From assembly GCA_002269645.1 (NCBI GenBank), contig NIVC01000980.1:62001-126000 (forward strand): 64,000 nt of DNA, read 5' to 3'. The number at the start of each line of letters is the position of its first letter. The first letter of the stretch is position 1. Positions 3,326 through 60,206 of this stretch are shown here, piece after piece. The notes below the pieces were generated by a model. That model ran no database searches. It was not told the origin of the DNA and saw nothing but the letters and a program-made list of their open reading frames with translations. This stretch comes from Macrostomum lignano (lineage: Eukaryota). The position numbers and the translations under genes were made by a program.

Positions 3326-3889
3326 AGTGCGTGAGGATTTATAGTTCTCCACACTAGACACAATTTATTGCCTAAATTATATAGAGTGAACAATAGGTCG
3401 AGATATTTTTTACAATTTTGTAACGGTAAAACGAAAAATTGAAAAATATCTATAGACAGAACATTACAGATAGTTAATATGCAAGCGCTTATAGCTTGTC
3501 CCGTGTCATTAGGTTTAGTTCACAGTTTCTCAAGAATCTAGCGATTATGCATTGGCTTTGACAAAGACAGCTCGCACAGAGACACAATTTATCAAAATCT
3601 TTATTAAATTGCGAAGCATCAATAAAATTGGGGCGTATTGATCAGTCAAGGAGTTCTGTTTGATTACGCAACACTTTCAAATTAAGAAAAAAAATTTCGA
3701 AGCTCAATATCACTTTAAAAGTACACCTTGCCAGCTGGCAATTTTTTTAAAGTTTTTATACACTAAAAATAGACAAAACGGCTTCTGAAAAATTTAAATA
3801 ATTTTTAAGTGATAAGTCCTCCTCTTACTACTACTACTGGTCAGCGGTAGTAGCATTGGGAGAACGAGAATCTCCACTTCTGTAGCTGC

Positions 3890-4606: not shown

Positions 4607-19095
<14,489 letters not shown>

Positions 19096-19857
19096 GGCGA
19101 ATGGGCTGACCCCGCCGACAGCAGCCGAGTCCTCTGCTCGAATAGGGAAAATTTGAGGGAAAACACACAGGAATTATCCCTGTTGCTGCATGCAGATGTC
19201 TTTGAAAATCCTGTCTCCAGCTGAAACCCGCTGTCTATCCATCATTATCTCTCCCCCGGCGCCCCAGCAGATCCCCTATTCGTGTCTCACCGTCTTTCAA
19301 TCCGAGATCCTTGATTGATTGCCAAGATGGGATTCTGTTCGAATGCCAATTCGAACTCCCCGGCAATTTGCTCTTCCGCCTCTGTCAGGCAAGTCGGCGA
19401 TGCAGGAAAGCAGGGGAGAAGCTGGGGGGGGGTGGAAGCTGCCAAATCGTATTGCCTGCCCCCTGGGTCTCCGATTCTCAGCTGTCTGTCTCACTGCGCC
19501 AGAAATTGCAGGAGAGACTGACGGGCGGTTTGAGGTCGGGAACGAAGGGAGAAAATGAGAGGAACGGCGACTTTTAAGGCCTCGGGGAGCTGCAACCCGC
19601 CCGCCTCACACCCACCCTCCCACTGTCCCGCGGTCTCCCCCATCTCTCAATCCTCCGTTCTCAATGTTCTGAAATAGGACAGGAATAATTCCTCCTCAGC
19701 TCAGCCTCTGTACCCTCTCGCTCGCCCTCAGCCTCCCCCAGCCTCCCCTCCATCCTGTGCCTTTGCAGTAAACCTGCTGATAAAAGAGTTGGTCCGAAGG
19801 AAACTTTTTTTAACTTATAAGGTAGGCACTTTTTGTATAGCTGCATGCTGGTGAATG

Positions 19858-20440
<583 letters not shown>

Positions 20441-20942
20441 GGAACCGAGAAGACTGAAAGTATGATGGCCTAAACTCATCTGAATGGTCCGCGACGCCTC
20501 ATCATTGCCTTGCTCAATCAATAATCTCGTTTTCTAGCCTATTCTAGCTAGTATTATCTCTGCACTTTTCATTGTAAATCCTACTATGGCTAAGCTAATG
20601 GACTAATATGCATGCAATTAGAGCGATTCCAATCCACCCAAGGCCTTAAATCATGCTGAACAGTACACGCCCCTGTGGCCCGAGCTTTGAGAAGGCTCTG
20701 GCAATTAGCGCAGGTACCTGTTGAAGAGCGGGAATCAGGCAGCTCACCTTTCCCATTCTTCTCCGAACAAGTTTGGCGACAGGGAATTTTCAATTTTGCA
20801 AGCCAGGCAGCTCAATAGGACGCAATGGAGAGAGGCTTGCCGGCTTTGGAGAAGTGGCTTTGAATGGCGGTTGAAGGAAATCGGAGAAAGCAATACTCTC
20901 TCCTGCCACTGACTCCCGGTGGACAGACAGAGGAAAGACAGA

Positions 20943-21749
<807 letters not shown>

Positions 21750-22544
21750 CATGCAGACAGGAAAATTTCCTCTGCATAGCTCAGAGTGGATCAGCAATCC
21801 AATACATTCGCAGTGTGTGCATGCGAGAGTCATGCAACGTGACATCGCATCACTTGTGCAGAGCGAGGGAGAGAGAAAGCTGAAAATTTGTCCTCAAAGC
21901 ATCGCTCAAGTTCTCAGAACAGCCTCAATTATTTCTGTGTGTAGACACAACTGGCAATTTGAGTGCGTGATTCAGTCGTGCAGTTCTCACGGCGCTGCCC
22001 ACTTGCTTTCAGTGCGTGCATTGTTATGCTACTTCACTAAAACTTTTCCATCGTATTACTATTAGTAGGCTAGAAGTGCACAGTGCGGCGCACGATTAAT
22101 TGCATGCATAAATAATGCAAAGTAAACGGAGCCGATCTGGGGGGGGGGGTGATTCCTATAGCTGGTATAGGGTGAGAAGAACCGGCTCAAGTTATTCTGC
22201 CTTTGTTTTTTTCTTACCCAAACTGGATCCTTTGAAACGCGTTTTTTCGCCTAATTAGCATAATTTATTTATAAAAATTCTCTGGTCGCAATGCTAAAAC
22301 TGCATGGCTCCCGACTCGGTGGCCTGTAAAATTGCTTCTGAAATCATTGCTTTCCATTTCTTGGGGTTAATATAGTTGGGTGAATATAGAGGAGACACCC
22401 AGCTACTTACAGAACCTCCGGTTCTTTCTGCCCGCATTCAAAGTTCTCTCTCTCAAGTGAAGGTAAGTTTTTTCGATTTTTCCCTGCTTTGAAGGAGATC
22501 CAATTTATAAAATCGATTATTATGGTCGATGATCGTTCCATGTA

Positions 22545-25085: not shown

Positions 25086-38281
<13,196 letters not shown>

Positions 38282-40873: not shown

Positions 40874-43800
40874 TCAAAGCGGCGTGATAGTTCTGCTGCC
40901 CAGAGCCAGTTTGGTAATAATGAAGACTGCGGCGCCCACCAGGCCTACGCTAACAATTGGCACAACAACTACCACGGCAATGAAGGCTGGGTCCGAACCG
41001 TCAGGACCGATCGGTGGCCGGGTTTCCGTCGAAGACTCTGTCTCCGTTGAAGACTCAGTTGAGCTCGCTGTCGCTGTTGATAGGCCGGTTGTTACCGTTG
41101 CCTCCGCGGTTGTTGTGCTCGAAGTTGTTACCACTGTTGTTGCTGTTGAGGATGATGTTGACTCTGTTGATTGGGTCGATTTAGTTGTAGTTGTAGTTAC
41201 CGTTGATCTAGCTGTAGTTTCCGTGGATGTAGTCGTAGTTCCCGTCAGTTCCGCAGTGCTTTCCGTTTTATCTGGCGTTGTTTCCGTTGCCCTGTCCGTC
41301 AATCCGCTTGTCGATTCTGTTGACCCTGGTTCGGCACTCGTCGTCAATTTTGTCGCCGCATCAGTCGAAGAAGTTTCGGTACCCGGTTTCTCAGTTGTTC
41401 CACCTGCTGTTGTTGCAGTTGTTGCTTCCAACGTAGTTTCCGCCGTCGTTTCCATCGTAGTTTCCATCGTAGTTTCCATCGTAGTTCCCGGTGTCGTTTC
41501 CGGAGGGGGGAATCGTTTGCCTACGTTGGGCAGCACCCGATCCCAGAAGTTGCACTCCCGGTCCATAAAAATGTCGGTCGCTAGCTGCTGCTGCTCAGCT
41601 CGCATCACCAAGCTGACTGGCGCATCCGGCTTGTAGCGAGGCCAGCCTGTCGGCGGCCAGCTTGGCACTCCCGAGCTGGCAAAGTTCGCCAGGCTTCGAA
41701 TTAGCACCCGAGACAGATTAGCTCGCTCCGGCGACTGCGCCTCCGCGGAGGCCGTCGGGAAGCCAAACGCATAAGACGCGTCGTGAACTAAAATTTTGCA
41801 TTTTAATAGGGCTAAAGTATATATAAAAAATTCAAACCGGTCGCATTACGATAGTGTCATAAAAAATCGTGTTAAAAGAGGGGTGCAGTGTCGTGAGAAT
41901 GCATCTCGAAAAGGATGGCTGTACCCTTGAGTCCTTGAGTGATGTCAAAGATCAAAGAGAGTTATAGTACCGTGTGAGATTGTGTCAAAAAGAGTGATGC
42001 AGAACTGCTAGAGCATGTTGAAGAGATTGACAGGCTTGACGCAAGCATGAGCTGTGATAGAGACCGGTTCATGTGGATCCAGACTCACACAAGGTCGCCT
42101 CTGGTAGCGATGTGCCAATCGAACGGAATGGCTCCTCAAATCGGAATTTGTACACGGCTCTGCTGTTTTCAGCGGACACTGCGCCCAAAAACAGCTGATT
42201 GCTGCAGGTGAACATTCGATTGCTGATGGCATTGGCCAGAGCACGCTCGTCTCGAGTGTAGTTGTCTCGGCTGAAGTAATCCGTAAAGTGCAACACTAGC
42301 GCCGTCTTGATGTCACTCCGTGGTTCAGTTGGGAATCTAGGGAAGTGCGCTATGACCTCAAGAAGTTCCTGCGGGCGCGAGTAAGCAGAAATTCCTTGGC
42401 AACTTTGTTTAATCAGTCAGTCAGTCAGTCAGTCAGTCAGTCAGTCAGTCAGTCAGTCAGTCAGTCAGTCAGTCAGTCAGTCAGTCAGTCAGTCAGTCAG
42501 TCAGTCAGTCAGTCAGTCAGTCAGTCAGTCAGTCAGTCAGTCAGTCAGTCAGTCAGTCAGTCAGTCAGTCAGTCAGTCAGTCAGTCAGTCAGTCAGTCAG
42601 TCAGTCAGTCAGTCAGTCACATTCAGAAACTCAGCATGTGTGAAGTTCTCGCCGATCCGCATGCGCTGAACTAGAATGTTCCCAGGCCCGTCAACGCCGC
42701 CAACCAGCAGAGGCACGGAGGCCAGGTCGGCCCCGCCCATGGCAAGCGGGTCGGACCGAATGAAATCGCCATCGATGACTGGCGGAAACTCGATCCCGGT
42801 GTACAGCCGGTTGAAGTCGCGCTGTCTCTCGTTGATGAAAGTGGCATTAAGCGCTCTGAGCCCGGCTAGGCAGGCCGGTATGTCGTCTGAGCCGCAGTTG
42901 AGCACGTTCTGAGCAAACACTCGGTTGATGAGCCGGACGCTGGCCGTATCGTTGGACACTGGGTAGGGCATGTACGGCGACCCGGTGAGCAGCACGGCTC
43001 GTTGGAACAGCACCGGCGACCGCGCCAAGTGGTAGCCAATCGACGCCGCTCCCGCCTCCACCCCCATCAGCGTGACTTTAGTCCGACTGCCGCCGAATTT
43101 TTCAATGTTGTACCTGATCCACTTTAACGCCTCCTCCTGATCGCGCAGGCCGAAATTCCCCGACACCGTGCTGTTGTCCAGCGACAGGAAGCCGAAGGCG
43201 CCAACGCGGTAAGCGACGGTCACCAGTAGCAGTTTGGCACTGTCCAGCACTCGATGCCCGCGCCAATCCGAGACGGCGCCGAACTGAAAGAAGCCACCGT
43301 GCAGGAAGACAATGACGGGAAGATCATCCTCCGACAGGTCGCTGTGCACCGGAGTCCAGATGTTCAGGTAGAGGCAGTCCTCAGACATGCTCGACACGAA
43401 CTCGTCCCGCTGCATGCACGGCGGAGGCATGCTTAGCGCCAGGATGCGATTGTCTTGAAGAATTTCCATGGGGGGGAGTGTAACTGCGTTAGGATTCGGC
43501 CTCTACTGATGTAGGTTGTTTGTAAAGTTGTTTTTTTTTGCAAAAAACCGCCGAGTTTGATAAATTAGATTTTTTCGCTTAGTAAAGTCGACATGCATTT
43601 GCTAACGAGTCGTTTAAAATAGTGAAATATTTTTATAAAGATTTACGAAATGTTCTGCGAGCAAATTTTTTTATTTTTTTAATCCGGACGTAGAACGCTG
43701 TCCGTTGCATCTGATCCTACGAGATCCTTTTTATGCCCACCCTACATGCATGTCTCGTGTCCCTTCCATATCTCCCAATATCCCGTCCATGTCTTTACAA

Positions 43801-46800
43801 TGTTCCTTCCATGTCTGTAAATTGTCCCTTCCATGTCTTCTTCTATGTCTTTGCAATGTTCCTTCCATGTCTGTCTATTTTCCTTCCATGCGTTTACAAT
43901 ATCCCTTTCATGTCTTTACAATGCCATTTCAATGTCTTTACAACGTCGGTTCCAGGTCCCTTTTATTTCATGGGCCACATTCTTTTCCTGTCTTCCACTG
44001 ACGCGCGATGCACTTTCTAGCATGATCCACAAATCACAAGTACCGATAGCAAGATTTAAAGCTAACACCAGAGCAGATCATCAGCTTACTGGTCCCAGAA
44101 AGCGGTTTCGGATTAGCAAATCTGAGTTCTCCGACGGGCGGCTCAGCGTACGGCACGCCCAGAAACTGGGTCAGGGTGGTGCCGGCCTCGGTTCGTATCG
44201 TCTCGCCAAGCACTGAACCGTAGCCCACCACAGTAATGCTGTAATTCCTCAGGACCAAGTAATCCACTCTTCTGACTCTGTTCGACTCCGGGACTTCTTG
44301 CGCCTGTTTCGGCTCGGCGGCCATCGAATTGTCAAACTGAGCAGTCAGTAGGCCAGCGTCCGGTCCGCATAGCCTGTTATGAAACGGCATCTCGTGCTTC
44401 CACATTGGGCAGCGGCCGGGCTCGAGGCCGAAGCCGTCTGGCAGAGAATCCGCGCTCGACGAGTCGTTGGCGGCGCGGTAGTTCATGAACTCTGTGCCGT
44501 TCAGCCCCGTCCGAGGCCACGCATTGTCGAGATCTGAGTAGGGGTAGGTGGGTGTCATTTCGTCTGCTGAAACATCTGCTGTTGAGGCATCTGCTAGACC
44601 ATCTGCTGTTGAAGCATCTGCTGGAGCATCTGCTGTTGAAGCATCTGCTGGAGCATCTGCTGGAGCATCTGCTGTGTGAAGCATCTGCTGGAGCATCTGC
44701 TGGAGCATCTGCTGGAGCATCTACTGTTGAGGCATCTGCTGGAGCATCTGCTGTTGAAGCATCTGCTGAAGCATCTGCTGTTGAAGCATCTGCTGGAGCA
44801 TCTGCTGGAGCATCTGCTGTGTGAAGCATCTGCTGGAGCATCTGCTGGAGCATCTGCTGTGTGAAGCATCTGCTGGAGCATCTGCTGGAGCATCTGCTGG
44901 AGCATCTACTGTTGAGGCATCTGCTGGAGCATCTGCTGTTGAAGCATCTGCTGGAGCATCTGCTGTTGAAGCATCTGCTGGAGCATCTGCTGGAGCATCT
45001 GCTGTGTGAAGCATCTGCTGGAGCATCTGCTGGAGCATCTGCTGTGTGAAGCATCTGCTGGAGCATCTGCTGGAGCATCTGCTGTGTAAAGCATCTGCTG
45101 GAGCATCTGCTGGAGCATCTGCTGGAGCATCTGCTGGAGCATCTGCTGTGTGAAGCATCTGCTGGAGCAGAGCCCCCTGCTCTCGCAAACTGGCTCCTAT
45201 TCTCCCTCCTACATTCCCAAATTGCACCAAAGATGTCGCCAACCTTCCAGCCTGACGAAGCGGCCAAGGTGGTCCATCATGGTGCTGGCCAGGCTCTCGT
45301 GTCCGGCGGGATATCCGGCTCGCACCAGCGGCTCGCCCAAGAAGTAGCGCACGTCAACGCTGTGATCCCCGCGTGAATCGATGGGATCCGTGACGTTCAT
45401 CTGGTAGACGTAAACGGGCTCCGTCGACGGCGCCTGCAGAAGGTCGCCGGCCGCCTCCCAGACCGGACAGGCGTAGCGAAAGTCGCCGATAGCTTGGGCC
45501 AGCAGCGGCCGGACGGCCTCGCCGAATTTCTTGGTCGGCCAGTCGGCCAGCGACAATCGAAGGAAGTTTTGGCCGCACGGACTGGTCTGGGTGTGCACTC
45601 GGGGGAAGTGGAGGAACTCCTGGCTGACAATCTGCGGGGGGACGATTAGAGATTAGTCACCCGCTCTGAGTCCATAGGGTGTCGTTGTTACAGGCGGTGG
45701 TTGCCTATAAAACTCGAAATATTCGCAGGAGGGCTGCGGGCTCGCTGATGCAGCTCCTCAACCAGCTCTGAAGGCAATTCTGCCCATTCCGCTGACTGCT
45801 GAGCGCATACAAGCGCGCCAATACTGTACGCAGGCACCACTCGTACACACGCTCACGCAGGGTGTACACAGCGACCCTGACTTTGTAATCGCCAGGCATG
45901 CAGGCATACACTGGCTGGCTTTGAACGGAATCGAACCAAGGCTCGAGGCTAGAGAGACAGATGCGTTCTCTGCTGGGCTGCTCTGCCCCCCCCCCACACA
46001 CCATCCTGATTCACAATGCCGAGACTTAGGCGCTAATGGAATCGCTCGAACAGCTCGGGGTATGCTCTCTATCGCCGTCCAAGTGACCTATACGCGCCGA
46101 GCCGAACATGCACTGCCCACTGCTTAAGATAGAGTTTGAGTCTCAGTTAGGGTGTAAGAATTAGGATTATGGATAAGACTTAAGTTATGTTGTTAGATTC
46201 CTGGCAGTTAATTTTCGTAGACCCAGCCAGCCCAGCAACCACGGACAACTGAAGCAGAAGGACCACTATACTCGAGTTTCTTAAAAATGAGCCAGAGGCC
46301 CGTAAGGAAGGCATGTCTGTCGGATTTCGTCATAAATACAGATTTCTCGAGACCATACTGAATTCTCAAGCCTCCTTGCGCCCTTCTAGATCAGTTGCCC
46401 ATGAGTTCAACATGCCAGCAAGCTTTTCGCACCACACTCGATACATTCTACTTGTCAGTAGACGATCTCTTCTACAGTTCATCTCGATTCAAACTCGCAC
46501 CTGGTTGAAGACGCTCTCAGTGACGTCGGGCCACTGCCCACCCTCAAGCGCCGCGTCAGCTCTCGGTCCACCAGAGTTGACGGCCGCTCCGGTCAGCACC
46601 GAGAAGTTTGAACCCTGCCGCCAGAGGTCCAGCGGGCCGCCGCTGCCATTGGGGAACATCTCCCCTGAGCCCAGCGGCACAAAGCCGTCCGGCGACACCG
46701 AGGCGGCCGCCAGCAGAAGCTGCTCGACACTGACCGCGACCAGGCAGTTTAACGATTCCTCGGGGCTGGACAAGTTGCAGGCAAGCTGGTTGGCCAGTTG

Positions 46801-47568
46801 CCAGCCCAGCTTCTGCGCTTCATCCGGCGAGTCAGACCAGGCTAGCGGCGAGGCAATCGATCCGCCCAGCATGGCGACCCGCTGGAACAGCGAGCCGTCA
46901 GAGCCGTCCGCCACCGCCAGGAGTCCCGCGGCGGCTGCGGCGTTGCCGTGGCCGGCCAGCGACACCCGAGCGGCGTCGCCGCCGAAGCTGCCGACGGCCT
47001 CCTCAAGGAACTGAATTGCCAGCAGTTGATCGCGCAGGCCCAGATTATCTGGAACTCCGTCGAAGCTCAGGTAACCAAGGACGCCCTGGCGAGACTGGAC
47101 CGTTGCTAGGACAACGCCGTGGATGGCGCTGAAAACGTCGCCAAGCTCGACGCCGACCTCCTGGCTGGCGAGCAGGATCAGCACCGGCTGCCGGCCGGCC
47201 AGGTCTCTAGACCGGACGCTGAGGTGCAGGCAGTCCTCGGATTGGCCGGCCGTGTTGTTGAAGTCGCCAAACGGGCAGGCAGGCGGCGGCAGAGTGGCGT
47301 TGATGCTCAGCATCTCCGAGAAGTTGAACGGCTCCGCCTGCTGGAATCGCAGCGGCGGCTGCGCGTAGCCGACGGAGAGAAAGCGGGACACCCGGTGGTC
47401 CGTGTTGTTGTGGTAGGTCAGGCGGATCTCCTGCCCGATGATTGTTGCATTCTGGTGCTGCACCTGCACCTCCCCGACCACCGAGGTGCTGAGCAGCTGC
47501 CCGTTGCTCCGTAGAGTTGCCGCTAGTAGCAGCAAAAGCAGCGAAAGCCGCGATACTTCAGTTAGCAT
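40874..47568 (-). CDS. Tandem two-domain cholinesterase-like (type-B carboxylesterase fold), non-catalytic neuroligin-like membrane protein, 1329 aa. Exons 47568-46501, 45631-45244, ~44566-44090, ~43483-42621, 42368-42089, 41787-40874
   Basis: Two sets of family motifs are present. Domain 1: GYAQPP-LRF, SEDCLHL, NLGLRDQ, FGGD, GDFRYACP, RCPMW. Domain 2: FLGVPYAEPPVGELRF, SEDCLYLNIW, FLHGG, GNFGLRDQ, FGGS, YAFGFP, ECNFW. Also a signal peptide, a Thr/Ser-rich stalk and the TM segment AFIAVVVVVPIVSVGLVGAAVFII. Exon lengths 1068+388+477+863+280+914 = 3990 are phase-compatible. The exon 2 donor (gttggc) is weak, and the exon 3 and 4 acceptors have in-frame alternatives. Confidence 0.85.
42412..42618. 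repeat. (AGTC)n microsatellite filling most of intron 4 of the cholinesterase-like gene
   Basis: Direct reading. Confidence 0.97.
44570..45165. repeat. Quasi-palindromic AGCATCTGCT-based minisatellite filling intron 2 of the cholinesterase-like gene
   Basis: Direct reading. Confidence 0.92.
45760..45912 (+). mobile_element. Short dispersed repeat, copy 2, in intron 1 of the cholinesterase-like gene
   Basis: Colinear similarity to 8011-8155. Confidence 0.7.
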
Positions 47569-48865: not shown

Positions 48866-51800
48866 TCACTTGACCACCCGCCTGACTTTGCGCGAATCCG
48901 CAGTGTACTGATCCAGGTGGCACAGCCGAGCCAGCCGCCGCTGCCAGCCTTCTGGCACGAAGGTTAGCAGGAAGGCCACGGCGACGGCCGCAATGCCGGC
49001 GACTCGCATCGGCGGAAAGTCGCCATAGTCGCCGTTGACGAAGGTGCCAAAGCGGAGCGTCTTCAGCCAGAATACGTGCAGGACTGCGGGGTGCGACGGG
49101 GAATCTTTGGTTAATTATCCTGTTCTGTCAATGTCAGTCTACATGCTAACAGTCTGTCACTCTCCGCCTTCTGTTCTGTCACTCTGACACTGTAGCAGTC
49201 TGTCACTCTCCGTCTTCTAGTCTGTCACTCTCCGTCTTCTAGTCTGTCACTCTCCGTCTTCTAGTCTGTCACTCTGACACTGAAGCAGTCTGTCACTCTC
49301 CGCCTTCTGTTCTGTCACTCTGACACTGTAGCAGTCTGTCACTCTCCGTCTTCTAGTCTGTCACTCTCCGTCTTCTAGTCTGTCACTCTGACACTGAAGC
49401 AGTCTGTCACTCTCCGCCTTCTGTTCTGTCACTCTGACACTGTAGCAGTCTGTCACTCTCCGTCTTCTAGTCTGTCACTCTCCGTCTTCTAGTCTGTCAC
49501 TCTCCGTCTTCTAGTCTGTCACTCTGACACTGAAGCAGTCTGTCACTCTCCGCCTTCTGTTCTGTCACTCTAACACTGTAGCAGTCTGTCACTCTCCGTC
49601 TTCTAGTCTGTCACTCTGAACTAAAGCAGTCTGTCACTCTCCGCCTTCTGTTCTGTCTCTCTGACACTGTAGCAGTCTGTCACTCTCAGTCGTGTGTTTT
49701 AGGTTAAATATTTTTTCGCAATTTTTGTCACAATTCGCACATCCCAGCTTAATGGCACTTTGGCTAGAATTTCCCTTCCTCATTAATAATTAACGAGCTT
49801 AGGCATCGGAGCCAGGACATGAAGAAGACTCAGCAAAAATCATAATTGAATTTTTATGCGGCTGACAAAGCTATATTTCTGGTTAAGCTGGTTGTCTGAT
49901 GCATTTATCAGTCTACTGCCTGATCGTCAGATTCGAACCAAATTTGACGTCTGATCGGATTAAAGAGATTTATATAAGGGTAAAATTTCAATATTTCAGG
50001 ATAGCAACAGGGTTGAATTATAAATCCGCGTGTCAGCGCATTCCGGATCCCACAGACTAAGCGGATTAACCGGCTTATTTGATTTCAAGGCTCAGAAATT
50101 TCCGTCTGTCTCAAGATGCGATTCGTTGCTGCTTTTAAGCCCTCAAAAGTGCTGGGAAACGCCCGGTAAATTTCCCGAAGTTGAAGGGTAGAGGAGGGAG
50201 GAAGGGAGAAGGGGAAGAGAGAGGAAGGAAGAAAATAGAGGGGGAGAAACAGATTGGAGGTATGGAGATAAGGAGAGAGGAAGGGAGGATAGAAAGGTGG
50301 GAGAAGAAGTGAAGAGAAGAAGGGAAGAGAAGAAGGGAAGAGAAGAAGGGAAGAGAGGAAAGGTGGAGAGGAAGGGAAAAGAGAAAGGGGGGAGAGAGGG
50401 AGAGAGGGAGGAGAAGAAGGGCAAGAGCAGCGGAGCACTCACGCAGCTCGACCACAATAGCCAGCAGCAGTCCGAAGCTGACCAGCAGGTGGTAGGTGAA
50501 GAAGTTGCCCAGGTGCAGCAGGAGGAACAGGATGCAGTTGGAGCCGGCGGCGCCGAACACGAACTGCCAGGGCGTGGCGACCGACAGCCCCGGCTCCAGG
50601 CGGAACCAGACCGACAGCAGCAGCACTCCGGGCCACAGGATCACCAGGGTGCAGACACCTACGGCCATGCGGTGACCCTTCTTTAGAGATTCTTAAACTA
50701 TTGGCTCCAGCAACCACCTCACTCCACATGTACACACCCGACTTCCCGCTCCGGCAACCACCTCACTCCACATGTACACACCCGACTTCCCGCTCTAGCA
50801 ACCACCTCACTCCACATGTACACACCTGACTCCCCGCTCCAGTAACCACCTCACTCCACATGTACACACCCGACTTCCCGCTCTAGCAACCACCTCACTC
50901 CACATGTACACACCCGACTTCCCGCTCCGGCAACCACTTCACTCCACATGTACACACCCGACTTCCCGCTCCGGCAACCACCTCACTCCACATGTACACA
51001 CCCGACTTCCCGCTCTAGCAACCACCTCACTCCACATGTACACACCCGATTTCCCGCTCCGGCAACCACCTCACTCCACATGTACACACCCGACTTCCCG
51101 CTCTAGCAACCACCTCACTCTACATGTACACTCCCGACTTCCCGCTCCGGCAACCACCTCATTCCACATGTGCACACCCGACTTCCCGCTAAAGTAACCA
51201 CCTCACTCCACATGTACACACTCGACTCCCCGCTCCAGCAACCACCTCACTCCACATGTACACACCAGCTGTCCGCTGTACATTTAATTCTGGCTCACCG
51301 ATAACGGACATCACCAGCATCACTTGACCAAGGTGCGGTATATAGGGCACCAAGGTGCGATCAAGCACGGTCTGAAAAATTAATGCAATAAATAATTCAT
51401 TTTTAGTATATAGGACTTCAGAGACTATATTATTTTACCAAAACACAGAACTAACCCGAAAAATAGCAAAACTTCCAGCTGAGAAGGCCGCCAGAGTTCT
51501 TAGCAGCATTGTACTCTTGTTGATGTACACCAGCAAGATAACGCCGCTGGTGCCCAGCAGGAAAGCAATTATCTGCAAATTTGAATTTGAAACGGTTGAC
51601 ATTGACCACCTCAGTCCCTGCCCCTCGCTCCCTGCCCCTCACTCCCTGCCCCTCACTCCCCGCCCCTCACTCCCTGCCCCTCACTCCCCGCCCCTCACTC
51701 CCCGCTCCCTGCCCCTCACTCCCTGCCCCTCACTCCCCGCCCCTCACTCCCCGCTCCCTGCCCCTCACTCCCTGCCCCTCGCTTCCTGCCCCTCACTCCC

Positions 51801-54800
51801 TGCCCCTCACTCCCTGCCCCTCACTCCCTGCCCCTCACTCCCTGCCCCTCACTCCCTGCCCCTCACTCCCTGCCCCTCACTCTCTGCCCCTCACTCCCTG
51901 CCTCTCACTCCCCGCCCCTCACTCCCTGCCCCTCACTCCCTGCCCCTCACTCCCTGCCCCTCACTCCCTGCCCCTCACTCCCCGCCCTCACTCCCGCTCC
52001 CTGCCCCTCACTCCCTGCCCCTCGCTTCCTGCCCCTCACTCCCTGCCCCTCACTCCCTGCCCCTCACTCCCTGCCCCTCACTCCCTACCCCTCACTCCCT
52101 GCCCCTCACTCCCTGCCCCTCACTCCCTGCCCCTCACTCTCTGCCCCTCACTCCCTGCCCCTCACTCCCTGCCCCTCGCTTCCTGCCCCTCACTCCCTGC
52201 CCCTCACTCCCTGCCCCTCACTCCCTGCCCCTCACTCCCTACCCCTCACTCCCTGCCCCTCACTCCCTGCCCCTCACTCCCTGCCCCTCACTCCCTGCCC
52301 CTCACTCCCTGCCCTCACTCCCTGCCCCTCACTCCTGCCCCTCACTCCCTGCCCCTCACTCCCTGCCCCTCACTCCCTGCCCCTCACTCCCTGCCCCTCA
52401 CTCCCTGCCCCTCACTCCCTGCCCCTCACTCCCTGCCCCTCACTCCCTGCGCCTCACTCCCTGCGCCTCACTCCCTGCGCCTCACTCCCTGCCCCTCACT
52501 CCCTGCCCCTCACTCCCTGCCCTCACTCCCTGCGCCTCACTTCCTGCCCCTCACTCCCTGCCCCTCACTCCCTGCCCCTCACTCCCTGCCCCTCACTCCC
52601 TGCCCCTCACTCCCTGCCCCTCACTCCCTGCCCCTCACTCCCTGCCCCTCACTCCCTGCCCTCACTCCCTGCCCCTCACTCCCTGCCCCTCACTCCCTGC
52701 CCCTCACTCCCTGCCCCTCACTCCCTGCGCCTCACTCCCTGCGCCTCACTCCCTGCGCCTCACTCCCTGCCCCTCACTCCCTGCCCCTCACTCCCTGCCC
52801 CTCACTCCCTGCGCCTCACTCCCTGCCCCTCACTCCCTGCCCCTCACTCCCTGCCCCTCACTCCCTGCCCCTCACTCCCTGCCCCTCACTCCCTGCCCCT
52901 CACTCCCTGCCCCTCACTCCCTGCCCCTCACTCCCTGCCCCTCACTCCCTGCCCCCCACTCCCAATCCAATATTCAAGCCAAGCAATCAGCAGCTCACTC
53001 GAATGCCAAGAAATTTTCTCTGCAGCACTACCCAACTGAGCAGGTAGGTGAAGGACGGGCAAACGGCAAATATGGTCATCATGTCCAGGCCGGGAATCAT
53101 AGTTAGAGATCGGTAGATGCAGTAGAGCATGAAATCCCATAATAGTGTGAATACGGTTGCTCGGACTGCAAATATTTTGGCTTTGCTCAGCTCTCCCGTC
53201 ATGATCACCATGTTTAGCCTGGAATTAGAACGGCAGTTTTATCTCATAGTTGCTTACATTTGTAAGACTAGCTTTGTTGAATAGAATAGAATAGAATAGA
53301 AAAGAATAGAATAGAATAGAATAGAACAGAATAGTATAGAATAGAATAGAATAGAATAGAATAGAATAGAATAGAATAGAATAGTATAGAATAGAATAGA
53401 ATAGAATAGAATAGAATAGAATAGAATAGAATAGAATAGAATAGTATAGAATAGAATAGAATAGTATAGAATAGAATGGAATAGAATAGAATTGTATAGA
53501 ATAGTATAGAATAGTATAGAATAGAATAGAATAAAATAGAATAGAATAGTATAGAATAGTATAGAATAGAATAGTATAGAATAGAATAGAATAGAATAGA
53601 ATAGAATAGAATAGAATAGAATAGAATAGAATAGAATAGAATAGAATAGAATAGAACAGAATAAAATAGAATAGAATAGAATAGTATAGAATAGAATAGA
53701 ATAGAATAGAATAGAACAGAATAAAATAGAATAGAATAGAATAGTATAGAATAGAACAGAATAAAATAGAATAGAATAGAATAGTATAGAATAGTATAGA
53801 ATAGTATAGAATAGAATAGAATAGAATAGAATAGAATAGAATAGAATAGAATAGAATAGAACAGAATAAAATAGAATAGAATAGAATAGTATAGAATAGT
53901 ATAGAATAGTATAGAATAGAATAGAATACAGTAGAATAGAATAGTATAGAATAGTATAGAATAGAATAGTATAGAATAGAATAGAATAGAATAGAATAGA
54001 ATAGAATAGAATAGAATAGAATAGAATAGAATAAAATAGAATAGTATAGAATAGAATAGAATAGAATAGAATAGAATAGAATAGAATAGAATAGAATAGA
54101 ATAGAATAGAATAGAATAGAATAGAATAGAGTAGAATAGAATAGAATAGAATAGAATAGAATAGAATAGAATAGAATAAAATAGAATAGTATAGAATAGA
54201 ACACCTGTGCAGATCCCTCAGCTGGCTGAGGTCGGGGCCGAGCCAACAGGCGCAGAATGCCATATAGACAGGGTAGCTCAGCACCAGCAGCCCCCCGGAC
54301 AGGTAGGTCAGCAGGAACGGCAGCTGCACCGGTGTCGCAACAGCCGTAGCCGAGCCGACGTTCACCGCGCCCGCAGGCGTGGTGCCGGCACCGGCCAAGT
54401 CCAGCTCCGAGCCGTTGCTTCCAGCGCTGCCGTTGCCGCCATCGACGCCGCCGCTGCCGGCGCTACTGTCGGCGATGCCGTACAGCTGGAAGACGCTGTT
54501 GACGCAGACGATCCACAGGCAGCAGACCACGCAGCTGAGCAGCAGGCCGTAGGCGATTTTCTTCAGCGCGTCGGCCGCGGCGGAGCTGCTTGTACTGTCG
54601 GCGACAACTGGAACGGTGCCCATCGCTGTGCCCGGCAGGCTGTTGGACACCTGTGACCTGTTGTTTTCCCGGCTGGGCGGCCGGCTTGAGAACTGCGAGT
54701 TGCGGTGCTGCTGCAGGTAGCCGGAGCTGCGCAGGCTGGCGTAGCTGGAGGCCAGCGTTTCCGAGAAGCTCGCCGGATCGCCTGCGGGTTGGCGGCGGGT

Positions 54801-55401
54801 CTCATCAGCTCCGAGCACTGAGTCATCATCAGCTCCAATCTCTGACTCATCATCAGCTCCGATCTCTGACTCATCATCAGCTCCGAGCTCTGACTCATCA
54901 TCAGCTCCGAGCTCTGACTCATCATCAGCTCCGAGCTCTGACTCATCATCAGCTCCGAGCTCTGACTCATCATCAGCTCCGAGCTCTGACTCATCGTCAG
55001 CTCCGAGCTCTGACTCATCATCAGCTCCGAGCTCTGACTCATCATCAGCTCCGAGCTCTGACTCATCATCAGCTCCGAGCTCTGACTCATCATCAGCTCC
55101 GAGCTCTGACTCATCATCAGCTCCGAGCTCTGACTCATCGTCAGCTCCGAGCTCTGACTCATCATCAGCTCCGAGCTCTGACTCATCATCAGCTCCGAGC
55201 TCTGACTCATCATCAGCTCCGAGCTCTGACTCATCATCAGCTCCGAGCTCTGACTCATCATCAGCTCCGAGCTCTGACTCATCATCAGCTCCGAGCTCTG
55301 ACTCTACAACCTGTCACCACCATTCTCTACAACCCGTCACCATCATTCTCACCAACCCGTCACCGTCATTCCCAAGCCAGAGTCCCCGACAGCCGCTCAC
55401 C
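48866..55401 (-). CDS. SLC35F3: SLC35F3/F4-like drug/metabolite transporter family member. Exons ending 55401 (start uncertain, ~55580), 54781-54205, 53218-52999, 51572-51456, 51371-51299, 50658-50443, 49083-48866. The N-terminal exon is unresolved (candidate ~55960-56040)
   Basis: KKIAYGLLLSCVVCCLW, PFLLTYLS...YPVY, FTYLLSWVVLQRKFLGIR|IIAFLLGTSGVILLVY, PWQFVFG and RVAGIAAVAVAFLLTFVPEGW match recalled SLC35F3/F4 motifs. Junctions are GT-AG and phase-compatible. F3 versus F4 cannot be resolved here. Confidence 0.82.
50708..51265. repeat. 44-bp minisatellite (GCAACCACCTCACTCCACATGTACACACCCGACTTCCCGCTC..)n
   Basis: Direct reading. Confidence 0.92.
51605..52960. repeat. 14-bp minisatellite (CACTCCCTGCCCCT)n
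   Basis: Direct reading. Confidence 0.95.
53277..54200. repeat. (AATAG)n pentanucleotide array with AGTAT variants
   Basis: Direct reading. Confidence 0.97.
54805..55302. repeat. 24-bp minisatellite (TCAGCTCCGAGCTCTGACTCATCA)n, ~20 copies
   Basis: Direct reading. Confidence 0.95.
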
Positions 55402-56394
55402 TTCGTGCATCCCCAATAGGCTGGACCTGCGCCTGGCCAAGTCCTGCAGCGCGTTGCCCAATTCAAGGTTGGCAGCGGGGCTTCGAGCGCCTCCGCTTGC
55501 CGCCGAGACCCGCTTGGACTCCGGCGTCAGACTGGTTGAGACCCTCAGCTTTAGCAACTCCCTGGAGTTGTTGCTCTCTAAACTTCTAAACTCTTAACGA
55601 TTAATAGTCAATGCCCCGTTTTAACAGGAACCTCGAGATATGAATATATATTAAGGCGTGGCTAGAGAAGTAAGAATATTGAGGTGGCTGCGAGCTGGGC
55701 CAGTCTCTATCTATCGCTACTCGTCCCCAATAAGATGAGATAAACAAGCGTGCCCGGCGCCGATATCCGGGAGAGGCCGGTAGCAAGGCTGAAGTCTGGG
55801 ACGAGAGAGAGAGTCAGGAAGAGGGGCCAGCCTCGAGCAAAGAGACGCCTTCTCAAGGGGAGGCTTTCTTCGAGAATCTTTGAGAGCAGAGAGACGGATG
55901 CGCACTCGGCCCCCCTCTGCACTGCACTGTACTCTTGCCGTCTGCACCTCTTCCCAGCTTCCCTACCCGAAGTCTTCCAATCCCAGTGCGAGTCACGAAT
56001 GAGTCCCGAGCCATGGAGCTCTAGATGCAACATCTCTGGCACTATGAGTATTTTTATTATTTTCTGGACTTCTGAGCGGGCGTACGTGCTAGTTGAAGTT
56101 GTTAATAATCATTGAACATAGTGAACAGGGGCGTAAGCCAAGCGGGGTCATGAGGGTCAAGGGGTCATGGGGGTCAAGGGGTCATGGAGGTCATGGGGGT
56201 CAAGGGGGTCATGGGGGTCAAGGGGGTCATGGGGGTCAAGGGGGCCATGGGGTCAAGGGGGTTATGGGAGTCAAGGGGGTCATGAAGCCCTCCCCCAGAC
56301 TGCCAAACATTTAAATTCTGAATCCTAATTTATTATTGTCAACTAGTTAGGTGATAGTATATGTAAATATCCCCTGTAGCGCTTAGTTGGCGTT

Positions 56395-58569: not shown

Positions 58570-59239
58570 GAAAACTGACTTTAAACAAAAACTCTCCAAC
58601 GTAAAATTAGTCACAACTTTTCAACAAAGCTTAATAAAAACAATTTGCAACAAGTCTTAAAAGTGTATTTTGCACGTTTGCAATTGGCATTTGATGCTTC
58701 TTTGAGTCAGATTCGTACCTTTCTAGCCAGGCTGTGTTGTGTACACTATGGTTAAAGTTAATTTCGCATTAATCTCGTGCATTCAACCGGATGCTGTCAT
58801 TTCGGTAGGGTTGAACATTAGATCACGAATGCTCAGCTGGGTGGAGTCGGGGCATCACGGGCAGATGAGATTCTTAATTGGCACTTGAAGAATAATTCAT
58901 CCCGCTCTTATATTCCGCCAGCTCTCTTTCCAGGTAAACTAGCTAGATCCAATTATTGGTTAATTAGTGAGAGATCTGCTTTTATAAAAGGTTTCCCCTG
59001 AACCAGAAACCTCGCTACAGCCAAATCAAGCTTTCACTTCGAGGAGCAGTCGAGCGAAAGAAAAACTTAGCATGGCAAGAAGGAAATCATTAAAGGCCAA
59101 AGCGAGTGAGCAGCTTAGCATTGCAGGGCAAGAGAAATGGAGAGGCCGCACAAGGAAGAAGAAAGTACAAATAGTTGTTAAGGAGCGGAGAAGCGGGAAG
59201 ATAGCGAATCGGGGAGATGGAGAAACGGAGAGATGGCGA

Positions 59240-60075
59240 AACAGGAAGATGTGGAAACGGGGAGATGGGAAAACAAGAAGATGGGGAAACGGAGTGATGG
59301 GAAGATGGAAGATGGGGAGAAGGAAAGATGGGGAGGACTTGGAAGATTGGGAATAGGGAAGATGCAGGGGAATAGAGAAAATAGGGAGAAGGGAGGATGG
59401 GGAGAAGGGAAGATGGGGAGAAGGGAAGATGGGGAATAGGGAAGATAGGGAGAAGGCAAGATGGAGAGAAGGGAAGATGGGGAGAAGGGAAGATGGGGAA
59501 ACAGGAAGATGGGGAAATGGAGTGATTGGGAGAATTGGGGAGATGGAGAGAATTAGGAAGCTGGGGAGAAGAGAAGATGGGGAGGATTGGGAAGATGGGG
59601 AATGGAGAAGATGGGGAGAAGGGAAGATGGGGAGAAGGGAAGATGGGGAGGATTGGAAAGATGGGGAGAAGGAAAGATGGGGAGAAGGGAAGATGGGGAG
59701 GATTGGGAAGATGGGGAATGGAGAAGATGGGGAGGATTGGGAAGATGGGGAATGGAGAAGATGGGGAGAAGGGAAGATGGGGAGAAGAGAAGATGGGGAG
59801 GATTGGGAAGATGGGGAATGGAGAAGATGGGGAGAAGGGAAGATGGGGAGAAGGGAAGATGGGGAGAAGGGAAGATGGGGAGAAGGGAAGATGGGGAGAA
59901 GGGAAGATGGGGAGAAGGGAAGATGGGGAGAAGGGAAGATGGGGAGAAGGGAAGATGGGAGAAGGGAAGATGGGGAGAAGGGAAGATGGGGAGAAGGGAA
60001 GATGGGGAGAAGGGAAGATGGGGAGAAGGGAAGATGGGGAGAAGGGAAGATGGGGAGAAGGGAAGATGGGGAATG
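59240..60075. repeat. Purine-rich 16-bp minisatellite (GGGAAGATGGGGAGAA)n downstream of the TTLL9 stop
   Basis: Direct reading. Confidence 0.92.
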
Positions 60076-60206
60076 GGATAATAAATTGGGAGTGGTGGCT
60101 AAGTAAGCCTCTCAGAAGCAAGAAGTAGACAGGCAGAGACAGGTTAATCAGATCTAGAGATTAAGGAGCATGATAAGAACAAAGGGATTGGAGCCACCGA
60201 GTCAGT

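What the first reader, a model, noticed from the sequence alone, without database searches (positions are those of the whole stretch)
40874..47568. Neuroligin-like protein with two tandem dead cholinesterase domains, a mucin stalk and a PDZ-type tail
Seen: one phase-consistent 1329-aa ORF encodes a signal peptide, ChE-like domain 1, a linker, ChE-like domain 2, a ~165-aa Thr/Ser stalk, a TM helix and a 13-aa tail ending ITPL. The domain 1/2 junction lies inside a single exon (44090-44566), so the fusion is not just a splice guess. The nucleophile elbow is GHGNA in domain 1 (Ser to Gly) and GVEAG in domain 2 (Ser to Glu). The catalytic His position is kept in domain 1 (DHSVDVRYFLG) but is Leu in domain 2 (LFHDASYAFG). 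All three canonical Cys pairs are present in both domains, which argues for folded domains rather than decay. Known: cholinesterase-like adhesion molecules (neuroligin, gliotactin, neurotactin) carry one dead ChE domain, and neuroligins add an O-glycosylated stalk and a PDZ ligand. Inference: a bivalent adhesion or ligand-binding receptor of an architecture I do not recognise.
Basis: partly seen in the sequence, partly recalled or inferred. Interest (0 to 1): 0.82.

Follow-up and report, generated by a model that had tools for sequence, protein, structure and literature searches.

The report
Flatworm membrane protein, two dead cholinesterases
This is a real, intact gene of the flatworm Macrostomum lignano for a cell-surface protein that carries two enzyme-dead cholinesterase-type domains in a row on a sugar-coated stalk; it belongs to a small, uncharacterised gene family, look-alikes arose separately in other animals, and its function is still untested.

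Summary
A six-exon, 1329-aa gene on the minus strand (40874-47568) encodes a signal peptide, ChE domain 1, a 37-aa linker, ChE domain 2, a Thr/Ser stalk, a TM helix and a 13-aa tail. Pfam COesterase matches both domains (E 2e-55 and 2e-92). Both are catalytically dead: D1 is GHGNA with His kept, D2 is GVEAG with His replaced by Leu.

The organism is Macrostomum lignano. The gene is already in UniProt as two flawed models, A0A1I8I8B3 and A0A1I8F227. Paralogs at 40% identity (PAA79327.1, PAA79323.1) have the same architecture. All five window introns recur in the paralog at the same columns and phases, so the fusion is real.

"Neuroligin-like" is true of the layout only. Both domains score best against AChE. 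All Macrostomum D1 and D2 domains form one clade (97% bootstrap), which indicates an internal duplication in this lineage. Uncharacterised tandem-ChE membrane proteins also exist in a nemertean, echinoderms, hemichordates and a tunicate, apparently of separate origin. The ITPL tail is not conserved in the paralogs.

AlphaFold folds both domains of a paralog but fixes no interdomain packing (pTM 0.56). No literature description was found. The function, probably non-enzymatic binding or adhesion, is inferred.

The parts
46501..47568 (-). Exon 1 (aa 1-356): start ATG at 47568, signal peptide (aa 1-23, 47500-47568), first two thirds of ChE domain 1
   Evidence: ORF and splice donor CAG|GTGCGA. Pfam PF00135 profile 4-317, E 2.3e-41. 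The start Met and the phase-0 intron are conserved in paralog P0269.
46939..46953 (-). D1 nucleophile elbow GHGNA (aa 206-210): Ser replaced by Gly
   Evidence: HMM column read-out, coordinates. G-H-G is conserved in the D1-type domains of P0124, P0269 and P0123.
45244..45631 (-). Exon 2 (aa 357-485): D1 segment with the retained His motif DHSVDVRYFLG (45332-45367)
   Evidence: Pfam profile 365-470. Acceptor CCCCGCAG|ATT, donor GAAG|GTTGGC.
44567..45243 (-). Intron 2 (phase 1), almost wholly a 12-bp tandem array (44563-45169, about 46 copies) that is open in all three frames
   Evidence: TRF and frames. An intron at the same alignment column with the same phase, splitting an Ala codon after G, is present in paralog P0269. 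The AChE alignment runs through the spliced junction.
44090..44566 (-). Exon 3 (aa 486-644): C-terminus of D1 (WP...GRCPMW), 37-aa linker (44262-44372), N-terminus of D2 (GVPYAEPPVGELRF), all in one uninterrupted frame
   Evidence: Pfam profile 7-51 for the D2 start. The homologous exon of P0269/P0124 and an exon of Lineus P0180 also span the D1/D2 junction.
42621..43483 (-). Exon 4 (aa 645-932): core of D2, including the HGGFF oxyanion motif and the elbow
   Evidence: Pfam profile 58-325, E 1.5e-61. Splice sites.
43050..43064 (-). D2 nucleophile elbow GVEAG (aa 785-789): Ser replaced by Glu
   Evidence: An acidic residue (E or D) occupies this column in every D2-type domain of the Macrostomum family (GAEAG, GVEAG, GDDAG).
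42369..42620 (-). Intron 4 (phase 0), holding a perfect (TCAG)n microsatellite (42413-42619, about 52 copies) that starts at the donor GTGACTGACTGA
   Evidence: The intron position and phase are shared with P0269. It is also homologous to intron 1 of D1 (alignment).
42089..42368 (-). Exon 5 (aa 933-1025): D2 segment between the acid-residue loop and the His loop
   Evidence: Acceptor CCCGCAG|GAA, donor TTGT|GTGAGT. No separate Pfam hit, but it is covered in the full D2 match and in the AChE alignment.
40874..41787 (-). Exon 6 (aa 1026-1329 plus stop): end of D2 (LFHDASYAFG, Leu in the catalytic His column), Thr/Ser/Glu stalk (40994-41503), TM helix (40916-40987), tail TKLALGSRTITPL (40877-40915), stop (40874-40876)
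   Evidence: Pfam profile 434-515. Composition and hydropathy, coordinates. The paralogs have the same stalk-TM-tail order.

Best explanation
The region is one intact protein-coding gene of the free-living flatworm Macrostomum lignano.

Its product is a type I membrane glycoprotein. A cleavable signal peptide is followed by two cholinesterase-fold (COesterase) domains joined by a roughly 37-aa flexible linker. Then come a mucin-like Thr/Ser/Glu stalk of about 170 aa, one TM helix and a 13-aa cytoplasmic tail.

Both domains have lost the serine-hydrolase machinery, so the protein cannot act as an esterase. The two domains arose by an internal duplication in the Macrostomum lineage. The gene then multiplied into a small paralog family with fixed signatures: G-H-G in D1 and G-x-[E/D]-A-G in D2.

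Most likely the protein holds two non-equivalent ChE-fold binding surfaces well above the membrane, on a stalk that could reach tens of nanometres if extended. It would then act as a non-enzymatic extracellular binding or adhesion module, as the known cholinesterase-like adhesion molecules do with a single domain that homodimerises.

Shown here: the gene structure, the domain content, the loss of catalytic residues, the topology signals, the family membership and the origin by duplication.

Inferred: glycosylation, adhesion or ligand binding, any partner, any PDZ docking of the ...TPL end, and whether the two domains pack into an intramolecular pseudo-dimer.
For: - Gene model: a phase-consistent 1329-aa CDS with GT..AG introns.
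- Paralog support: all five introns coincide in alignment column and phase (0,1,1,0,1) with introns of paralog PAA79327.1, whose sites are canonical GTGAG donors.
- D1/D2 junction: it lies inside one exon in the window, in both paralogs and in Lineus.
- Single protein: there is no hydrophobic segment between the domains. D2 therefore has no signal peptide of its own and D1 has no anchor.
- Domains: two full PF00135 matches.
- Dead triads: with AChE alignments.
- Topology: 18 N-x-S/T sequons, six canonical Cys-pair positions, stalk composition and a single TM peak.
- Family: P0124 and P0269 are 40% identical over the full length with the same order of parts. D1 is 42% and D2 44% identical, against 32% for the stalk and 15% for the tail. 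P0123 carries alternating D1-type and D2-type units.
- Internal duplication: all eight Macrostomum domains are monophyletic at 97% NJ bootstrap, with the D1 clade at 98% and the D2 clade at 95%. The BLAST matrix agrees. A phase-0 intron sits at the homologous position in D1 and D2.
- Fold: in the AlphaFold model of the paralog ectodomain both domains fold (most 10-residue blocks have pLDDT 80-97), the linker is disordered, and the best PDB matches are human AChE with TM 0.82-0.84.
- Background: dead ChE domains acting as adhesion or dimerisation modules are established for neuroligins, gliotactin, neurotactin, glutactin and thyroglobulin (PMC5943944, PMC10084454).
Against: - No transcript, expression or binding data could be reached. 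Splicing rests on sequence logic and paralog conservation.
- The intron 2 donor (GTTGGC) is weak.
- The tail is very short and its T-P-L end is not shared by the paralogs, so intracellular scaffolding is doubtful.
- AlphaFold pTM is 0.56 with a disordered linker. This gives no support for a fixed two-domain arrangement, although the alignment had only 40 rows and the model is of the paralog, not of the window protein.
- The tree is neighbour-joining on 496 columns, contains few bona fide neuroligin or gliotactin references, and may suffer long-branch attraction between the fast-evolving Macrostomum domains.
- An invariant acidic residue at the D2 elbow suggests a pocket-based function that the adhesion model does not explain.
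Confidence: 0.6

Rival explanations
1. It is a non-catalytic small-molecule binder on the cell surface. D2 keeps an AChE-like core and oxyanion motif but carries an invariant Glu/Asp at the nucleophile position. It would use the old active-site pocket to bind or sequester a cationic or ester ligand (choline esters, amines, xenobiotics) without hydrolysing it.
For: - D2 is far closer to AChE than D1 is: 213 against 99 bits.
- D2 keeps the HGGFF motif.
- An acidic residue occupies the elbow in all six D2-type domains seen.
- The same Ser-to-Glu change occurs independently in a Parastrongyloides protein, GAEAG.
Against: - The Omega (Cys) loop is only 13-14 residues long and lacks the choline-binding Trp (sequence).
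- The acid and His positions of the triad are both replaced.
- This reading does not explain why two domains and a stalk are needed.
Confidence: 0.15
2. It is a surface-coat, matrix or barrier glycoprotein. The ChE domains serve only as stable, protease-resistant globular heads or oligomerisation modules, as in glutactin or the thyroglobulin ChEL domain. The protein would be part of an epidermal or gut glycocalyx and might be shed, with no specific receptor-ligand role.
For: - It has a mucin-like stalk and heavy N-glycosylation potential.
- The tail is very short and poorly conserved, 15% identity to the paralog.
- The family has expanded in a lineage-specific way.
- ChE domains are known to act as dimerisation or chaperone modules (PMC5943944).
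Against: D1 and D2 are each kept at 42-44% identity between paralogs with fixed, distinct elbow signatures. This suggests domain-specific constraints beyond a bulk structural role. There are no expression data either way.
Confidence: 0.15
3. It is the flatworm's functional neuroligin equivalent: a synaptic adhesion molecule that binds neurexin and docks to PDZ scaffolds through ...ITPL.
For: - The layout matches the neuroligin description: ChE domain, O-glycosylated region, TM, C-terminal PDZ motif (PMC10084454).
- D1 has Gly at the nucleophile position, as neuroligins do.
- The C-terminus fits [S/T]-x-hydrophobic.
- Neuroligin-2 and thyroglobulin rank close behind AChE among D1's PDB hits, 90-91 bits against 99.5.
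Against: - AChE/BChE outrank neuroligins for both domains.
- The Macrostomum domains do not group with the neuroligin-labelled sequences.
- The tail is 13 aa, against roughly 100 aa or more in neuroligins (my knowledge).
- The motif is absent from the paralogs.
- The neurexin-contact residues were not examined.
Confidence: 0.06
4. It is an artefact: two neighbouring esterase-like genes (or a decaying pseudogene) stitched together by a splice guess.
For: - Most multi-COesterase database entries found here are fusions of tandem arrays with internal signal peptides, for example Lineus XP_064631732.1.
- The two UniProt models of this very locus are visibly faulty.
Against: - The junction is a continuous frame inside exon 3.
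- There is no internal signal peptide or TM.
- The same architecture, intron positions and phases recur in paralogs at 40% identity.
- All six exons are free of stops or frameshifts.
- Both domain types fold in AlphaFold.
Confidence: 0.04

Closest known systems
Macrostomum lignano paralogs PAA79327.1 (BOX15_Mlig007046g1, 1326 aa) and PAA79323.1 (BOX15_Mlig025559g3, 1232 aa); also UniProt A0A1I8G704
   Same: The order of parts is identical: signal peptide, D1 (G-H-G elbow), linker, D2 (G-x-E-A-G elbow), Thr/Pro-rich stalk, TM, tail. Identity is 40% over the full length. Five introns are shared with the same phases.
   Different: - The linker is poly-Pro.
- The tails are longer and unrelated, with no [S/T]-x-hydrophobic end.
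- D1 of the paralog lacks the first Cys pair and the retained His.
- There are two extra introns in D2.
- All are deposited only as 'hypothetical' or 'COesterase domain-containing' proteins.
Neuroligins (NLGN1-4, Drosophila Nlg1-4, C. elegans NLG-1)
   Same: A catalytically dead ChE-fold ectodomain with Gly at the nucleophile position (as in D1), an O-glycosylation-type stalk, a single TM, type I topology and a C-terminal class I PDZ-type end (PMC10084454).
   Different: - Neuroligins have one ChE domain that homodimerises through a four-helix bundle (PMC5943944). Here there are two different domains in one chain.
- The tail is 13 aa instead of a long scaffold-binding tail.
- The protein is not in the neuroligin clade by score or tree.
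Other cholinesterase-like adhesion molecules: gliotactin, neurotactin, glutactin
   Same: Non-catalytic ChE-fold extracellular domains used for adhesion or matrix roles (PMC5943944, PMC10084454).
   Different: They are single-domain. Neurotactin is type II and glutactin is secreted (my knowledge). No sequences of these were available here for a direct comparison.
Acetyl- and butyrylcholinesterase
   Same: They are the best sequence and structure matches for both domains, with the three disulfide positions conserved.
   Different: The triad is destroyed in both domains, the Omega loop is short and lacks the choline-binding Trp, and D1 has lost the oxyanion motif. The protein is not an enzyme of this class.
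Uncharacterised tandem-ChE, TM-anchored proteins of other phyla: Lineus longissimus XP_064622620.1; Glandiceps XP_077983973.1; Saccoglossus XP_006825066.1; Acanthaster XP_022079595.1 and XP_022100211.1; Lytechinus XP_054767789.2; Diadema XP_071500051.1; Styela clava XP_077968891.1 (four domains)
   Same: - Signal peptide, two or more ChE domains without internal signal peptides, a stalk, a C-terminal TM and a short tail.
- The membrane-proximal domain is always dead (GHGSG, GLGAG, GFKAG, GMGSG, GQGSG; GSDTG in Lineus).
- Several end in [S/T]-x-hydrophobic.
   Different: - In most of them D1 keeps a GxSxG triad.
- The per-domain tree and the score matrix place them apart from the Macrostomum domains. 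Lineus D1 and D2 are each other's closest relatives, and the ambulacrarian D1 and D2 groups are old and separate.
- The shared architecture therefore looks convergent. None is characterised.
Thyroglobulin ChEL domain
   Same: A dead ChE domain used as a dimerisation or chaperone module. It is the second-best PDB hit of D1, at 91 bits (PMC5943944).
   Different: It is a single C-terminal domain of a very large secreted vertebrate protein, with no TM.

Membership tests
Type-B carboxylesterase/lipase fold (Pfam COesterase, PF00135) | Full-length match to the family profile above the gathering score (27 bits) | tested here: met
   D1 scores 188.9 bits over profile 4-498 of 515. D2 scores 311.2 bits over profile 7-515 of 515.
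Type-B carboxylesterase/lipase fold (Pfam COesterase, PF00135) | Three conserved disulfide positions | tested here: met
   Cys is present at all six consensus positions in both domains. Two positions were read by eye because of alignment trimming or shift.
Active carboxyl/cholinesterases (AChE, BChE, carboxylesterases) | Ser-Glu/Asp-His catalytic triad in a G-x-S-x-G elbow | tested here: not met
   D1 reads Gly / Ser / His. D2 reads Glu / Pro / Leu at the three columns.
Active carboxyl/cholinesterases (AChE, BChE, carboxylesterases) | Long Omega (Cys) loop carrying the choline-binding Trp (AChE/BChE only) | tested here: not met
   There are 13-14 residues between the first Cys pair in both domains and no Trp (sequence; alignment gaps).
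Neuroligins | Closest relatives by sequence or phylogeny are neuroligins | tested here: not met
   The best PDB hit of both domains is AChE. D2 scores 212 bits against AChE and 123-162 against neuroligin-labelled sequences. The Macrostomum domains form their own clade at 97%. Caveat: few bona fide neuroligin references were available.
Neuroligins | [quoted passage not shown] | tested here: inconclusive
   The stalk, the TM and a T-P-L end are present. However there are two ChE domains, the tail is only 13 aa, and the motif is absent from the paralogs.
Neuroligins | Binds neurexin LNS domains; forms 2:2 complexes as a homodimer | not testable with these tools
   This needs binding assays. No coordinates were available to inspect the interface.
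Cholinesterase-like adhesion molecules (functional grouping) | Non-catalytic ChE-fold domain exposed extracellularly on a membrane-anchored or matrix protein | tested here: met
   Both triads are dead. A signal peptide, sequons, disulfide positions and a single C-terminal TM are present. Topology is predicted, not measured.
Cholinesterase-like adhesion molecules (functional grouping) | Mediates cell adhesion or heterophilic binding | not testable with these tools
   No expression or interaction data could be reached.
Macrostomum tandem dead-ChE family (defined here) | SP - D1 (G-H-G elbow) - linker - D2 (G-x-[E/D]-A-G elbow) - stalk - TM, with a collinear full-length alignment and shared introns | tested here: met
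Ambulacrarian/nemertean tandem-ChE membrane proteins | Orthology of D1 with D1 and of D2 with D2 | tested here: not met
   Cross scores (window D2 against their D1: 144 bits; window D1 against their D2: 94 bits) are at least as high as the single collinear alignment spanning both domains (201 bits). The tree and the score matrix separate them.

The most novel reading that the evidence does not exclude
Tandem cholinesterase-fold membrane proteins may be a recurrent, so far undescribed class of adhesion-type receptors. They appear to have arisen at least three times by internal duplication: in Macrostomum, in the nemertean Lineus, and in ambulacrarians (perhaps also tunicates). In this reading the second domain replaces the partner subunit of the usual ChE-fold homodimer, giving a built-in asymmetric 'heterodimer'. 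A neuroligin-style [S/T]-x-hydrophobic tail would have been acquired repeatedly: 6 of the 12 such proteins seen here have one, against 6% of the other proteins retrieved.
Probability: 0.3. Interest if true: 0.65.

Novelty: new variant of a known kind. Interest (0 to 1): 0.45.

Why it matters
Dead cholinesterase domains are a classic case of an enzyme fold re-used for cell adhesion, as in neuroligin, gliotactin and neurotactin. All described cases use one domain, which pairs with a second copy of the same protein.

A family that hard-wires two different dead domains into one chain would be a natural experiment. It would show what the dimer is for and how new binding surfaces evolve on this fold. 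That would hold all the more if the arrangement evolved several times.

M. lignano is amenable to RNAi and to transgenesis, so the question could be tested. If the function turns out to be an ordinary surface glycoprotein role, the finding is mainly an annotation correction for this locus and a note on lineage-specific family expansion.

Tried and rejected
- **Word-index protein searches.** They were swamped by low-complexity words. The full-length query returned only two proteins. The junction and D1 queries did not even return the identical UniProt entry, so their silence on transcripts or orthologs means nothing. The exhaustive search was the informative one.
- **Handing in the spliced 1329-aa model.** For the structure prediction I did not try the spliced model.
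- **Repeat array of intron 2 as coding sequence (an ADAPADAP... linker).** Rejected for four reasons. A 12-bp unit without stop codons is trivially open in all frames. The frames still acquire stops. The paralog has an intron at the same column and phase. The AChE alignment runs straight across the spliced junction.
- **P0001's alternative splices.** Rejected because they delete conserved core segments, namely the WP motif of D1 and the acid-loop strand of D2.
- **Intramolecular four-helix-bundle pseudo-dimer.** Neither supported nor excluded. pTM is 0.56 and no coordinates were available to measure geometry.
- **Intron positions as a test of common origin with Lineus.** Rejected as not decisive. 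One position coincides (after ...F-x-x-x-G/E of the C-terminal helix), but such introns may be ancient in the whole family.
- **Literature searches.** Searches for tandem or double ChE domains and for the gene identifiers found nothing relevant.
- **Second copy in the window.** None was found.
- **tRNA genes in the window.** None were found.

Full report
**What is in the sequence**

The minus strand between 40874 and 47568 holds six open segments. Their translations match successive parts of the Pfam COesterase profile twice over: D1 covers profile 4-317 and 365-470, and D2 covers 7-51, 58-325 and 434-515.

I placed the splice sites by hand. The exons are 47568-46501, 45631-45244, 44566-44090, 43483-42621, 42368-42089 and 41787-40874. 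All introns are GT..AG with phases 0,1,1,0,1.

Scanned as two halves, D1 matches PF00135 at E 2.4e-55 and D2 at E 2e-92, both essentially full length. This is far beyond chance.

I built a family HMM from 45 single-domain relatives and read out the catalytic columns.
- D1: elbow GHGNA (Ser to Gly), acid position Ser, His retained. The HGG oxyanion motif is gone.
- D2: elbow GVEAG (Ser to Glu), acid position Pro, and Leu in the catalytic His column. A His lies two residues downstream. D2 keeps HGGFF.

The same assignment follows from the direct alignments to AChE.

Cysteines occupy the three canonical pair positions in both domains. Residues 1121-1290 are 39% Thr, 15% Ser and 12% Glu. The only strong hydropathy peak is 1293-1316, and the tail is TKLALGSRTITPL. 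There are 18 N-x-S/T sequons in the ectodomain.

Exon 3 is one continuous frame. It runs from the C-terminal WP...GRCPMW part of D1 through a 37-aa linker into GVPYAEPPVGELRF of D2. No hydrophobic segment lies between the domains. A D2-only product would therefore lack a signal peptide, and a D1-only product would lack an anchor.

**Organism and existing records**

The protein matches two UniProt entries from Macrostomum lignano, A0A1I8I8B3 (P0001, 1013 aa) and A0A1I8F227 (P0002, 1245 aa). Both are models of this same locus, and both already join D1 and D2.

Both are faulty. P0001 lacks the N-terminus and skips conserved core segments. It also shifts frame in the 12-bp repeat of the stalk, so it loses the stalk and the TM. 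P0002 is fused to an upstream repeat-rich gene and has frame errors.

**Independent validation from paralogs**

An exhaustive phmmer search of 1.84 billion representatives found further M. lignano proteins: PAA79323.1 (P0124, 1232 aa), its near-twin PAA79327.1 (P0269, 1326 aa), A0A1I8G704 (P0123, 3380 aa) and A0A1I8F5T1 (P0153).

P0269 aligns collinearly with the window protein over its whole length at 40% identity. By region the identity is 42% in D1, 44% in D2, 32% in the stalk and 15% in the tail.

It has the same order of parts and the same elbow signatures: AGHGTA in D1 and GAEAG in D2.

I fetched its locus (L001) and mapped its eight exons. All five window introns fall in the same alignment columns as introns of P0269 and have the same phases. 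These include the Ala codon split after G at the contested intron 2. The paralog's donors are canonical GTGAG.

The exon that spans the D1/D2 junction is also a single exon in P0269, in P0124 and in a Lineus analogue.

Taken together, this settles the question of one gene versus two as far as sequence alone can. Intron 2 of the window is filled by a 12-bp tandem array (44563-45169). The array is open in all three frames only because the unit has no stop codon. It is not coding.

**Where the two domains came from**

D1 and D2 of the window protein are only 25% identical, so the duplication is not recent.

I made a neighbour-joining tree of 56 domains on 496 HMM columns with 100 bootstraps. All eight Macrostomum domains form one clade (97%), split into a D1 clade (98%) and a D2 clade (95%).

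A pairwise score matrix agrees. The best hit of a Macrostomum D1 outside the D1 group is a Macrostomum D2 (114-127 bits), slightly above AChE at 92-110 bits.

Intron 1 in D1 and intron 4 in D2 lie at the homologous position, VFNQ|IVSQEF against EFLN|ELLEVI, and both are phase 0.

The simplest reading is an internal duplication in the lineage leading to Macrostomum, followed by gene duplication. P0124 and P0269 lie about 30 kb apart in opposite orientation on one contig.

The caveats are that the method is NJ only, that long-branch attraction is possible, and that few genuine neuroligin or gliotactin references were included.

**Relation to known families**

For both domains the best solved relatives are AChE and BChE. 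D2 scores 213 bits and D1 99.5 bits. For D1, thyroglobulin ChEL and neuroligin-2 follow at 90-91 bits.

An AlphaFold2 model of the paralog ectodomain (P0124 residues 22-1098, 40-row alignment) has mean pLDDT 78.4. Both domains are mostly at 80-97 and the linker is below 50. Its best PDB matches are human AChE with TM 0.82-0.84.

The protein is therefore a member of the COesterase fold. It is not an active esterase or cholinesterase, and it is not a member of the neuroligin clade.

It does share the neuroligin layout described in PMC10084454: ChE domain, O-glycosylated region, TM and a C-terminal PDZ motif. This makes it a cholinesterase-like adhesion-molecule-type protein by architecture.

Canonical ChE-fold proteins dimerise through a four-helix bundle of helices alpha3(7,8) and alpha10 (PMC5943944). 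Whether D1 and D2 do this within one chain is an attractive idea. The model's pTM of 0.56 gives it no support, and I could not inspect coordinates.

**Is the architecture unique?**

It is not. The exhaustive search returned dozens of predicted proteins longer than 1000 aa with several COesterase stretches.

Most are fused models of tandem arrays of active esterases with internal signal peptides. Examples are Lineus XP_064631732.1, Solemya, Cirrhinus and Parastrongyloides.

A distinct set is different. Its members have one N-terminal signal peptide, two or more ChE domains, a dead membrane-proximal domain, a stalk, one C-terminal TM and a short tail. The set comprises:
- Glandiceps XP_077983973.1
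- Saccoglossus XP_006825066.1
- Acanthaster XP_022079595.1 and XP_022100211.1
- Lytechinus XP_054767789.2
- Diadema XP_071500051.1
- Lineus XP_064622620.1
- Styela XP_077968891.1, with four domains

The ambulacrarian proteins are collinear orthologs of one another at 30-48% identity, so they are real genes. All are annotated only as uncharacterised.

By tree and score matrix they are not orthologs of the Macrostomum family. The two Lineus domains are each other's closest relatives. The architecture therefore seems to have arisen more than once.

**The tail**

Six of the twelve TM-anchored tandem proteins end in [S/T]-x-[LVIMF]: the window protein with TPL, and others with TQF, TKL, TSM, SAL and TKM. 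Among the other retrieved proteins the figure is 15 of 262. The binomial tail probability is 2e-5, but the proteins are not independent.

The two Macrostomum paralogs do not have such an end. For this gene the PDZ reading is therefore weak. As a recurrent feature of the class it is a lead.

**Literature**

Seven full-text searches found no paper describing such proteins or this gene. They covered tandem or double cholinesterase or carboxylesterase domains, the gene and protein identifiers, and Macrostomum together with these families. The library does not cover most subscription journals, so absence is not proof.

**Verdict**

The locus is a genuine single gene for a membrane-anchored protein with two dead ChE domains. 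It is a member of a lineage-specific Macrostomum family that is present in databases but uncharacterised. It is neuroligin-like in layout only.

The most likely function is non-enzymatic extracellular binding or adhesion. A pocket-based ligand-binding role for D2 and a structural surface-coat role are the main rivals. The conserved acidic residue at the D2 elbow is what suggests the pocket-based role.

Interest is moderate. This is a new variant of a known kind. It would become more interesting if the convergent 'built-in heterodimer' idea holds.

Noticed in passing
window 44563-45169 (intron 2): A 12-bp tandem array (unit TCTGCTGGAGCA on the plus strand, about 46 copies, with a higher-order period of about 185 bp) is open in all three minus-strand frames. 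It produces spurious ORFs of up to 299 aa (ADAPADAP, CSSRCSSR, MLQQMLQQ).
   Followed up: yes
window 42413-42619 (intron 4): A perfect (TCAG)n microsatellite of about 52 copies begins directly at the splice donor (AAT|GTGACTGACTGA...). Copy-number change there could touch the donor site.
   Followed up: partly
UniProt A0A1I8I8B3 (P0001) and A0A1I8F227 (P0002), models of window 40874-47568: Both deposited models of this locus are wrong. They have skipped core segments, a frame shift in the 12-bp repeat at 41426-41501 that removes the stalk and the TM, and a fusion to the upstream repeat-rich gene (window about 50135-55285).
   Followed up: yes
D2 elbow: window 43050-43064; P0124, P0269 and P0123; P0127 (Parastrongyloides): An acidic residue (Glu or Asp) replaces the nucleophile Ser in every D2-type domain of the Macrostomum family. 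The same GAEAG elbow occurs in a nematode (Parastrongyloides trichosuri) multi-domain 'acetylcholinesterase' model. The conservation is unexplained.
   Followed up: partly
L001 and L002 (GCA_002269645.1 contig NIVC01000640.1, about 217-224 kb and 254-262 kb): The two near-identical paralogs PAA79323.1 and PAA79327.1 lie about 30 kb apart in opposite orientation. This looks like a recent inverted segmental duplication. Their stalks differ in length by about 90 aa and their tails differ completely.
   Followed up: partly
P0269/P0124 domain 1 (L001 10001-11047): D1 of the paralogs has lost both cysteines of the first canonical disulfide (HMM columns read D and L) and also the His that the window's D1 retains. 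D1 is therefore evolving more freely than D2.
   Followed up: no
window 5535-5918 (-): This ORF matches the transmembrane amino-acid transporter family (Pfam Aa_trans PF01490, E 6e-12, profile 205-299). It is probably one exon of a neighbouring transporter gene.
   Followed up: no
window 2677-4400, 5929-6968, 8113-8598, 10536-11050, 14021-15460, 19661-21883, 25230-25842, 35248-36025, 51517-55597, 59090-60128, 61836-63008: The window is packed with long tandem arrays, which generate overlapping spurious ORFs of 120-530 aa on both strands. Composition swings strongly, for example AT skew -0.94 at 26-28 kb. This is what I would expect of a very repeat-rich genome, as I understand M. lignano's to be (my own knowledge, not tested here).
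   Followed up: no
(tool behaviour): The word-indexed protein search failed to return the identical UniProt entry P0001 for queries taken from the same gene. Negative results from that tool for this protein are therefore uninformative.
   Followed up: yes
P0126 (Styela clava XP_077968891.1) and P0132 (MetaClust UPI000696023A): These are membrane-anchored proteins with four and three ChE domains respectively. Only the membrane-proximal domain is dead (GQGSG, GTGSA) and the tails end in SAL and TKM. They extend the tandem architecture beyond two domains.
   Followed up: partly
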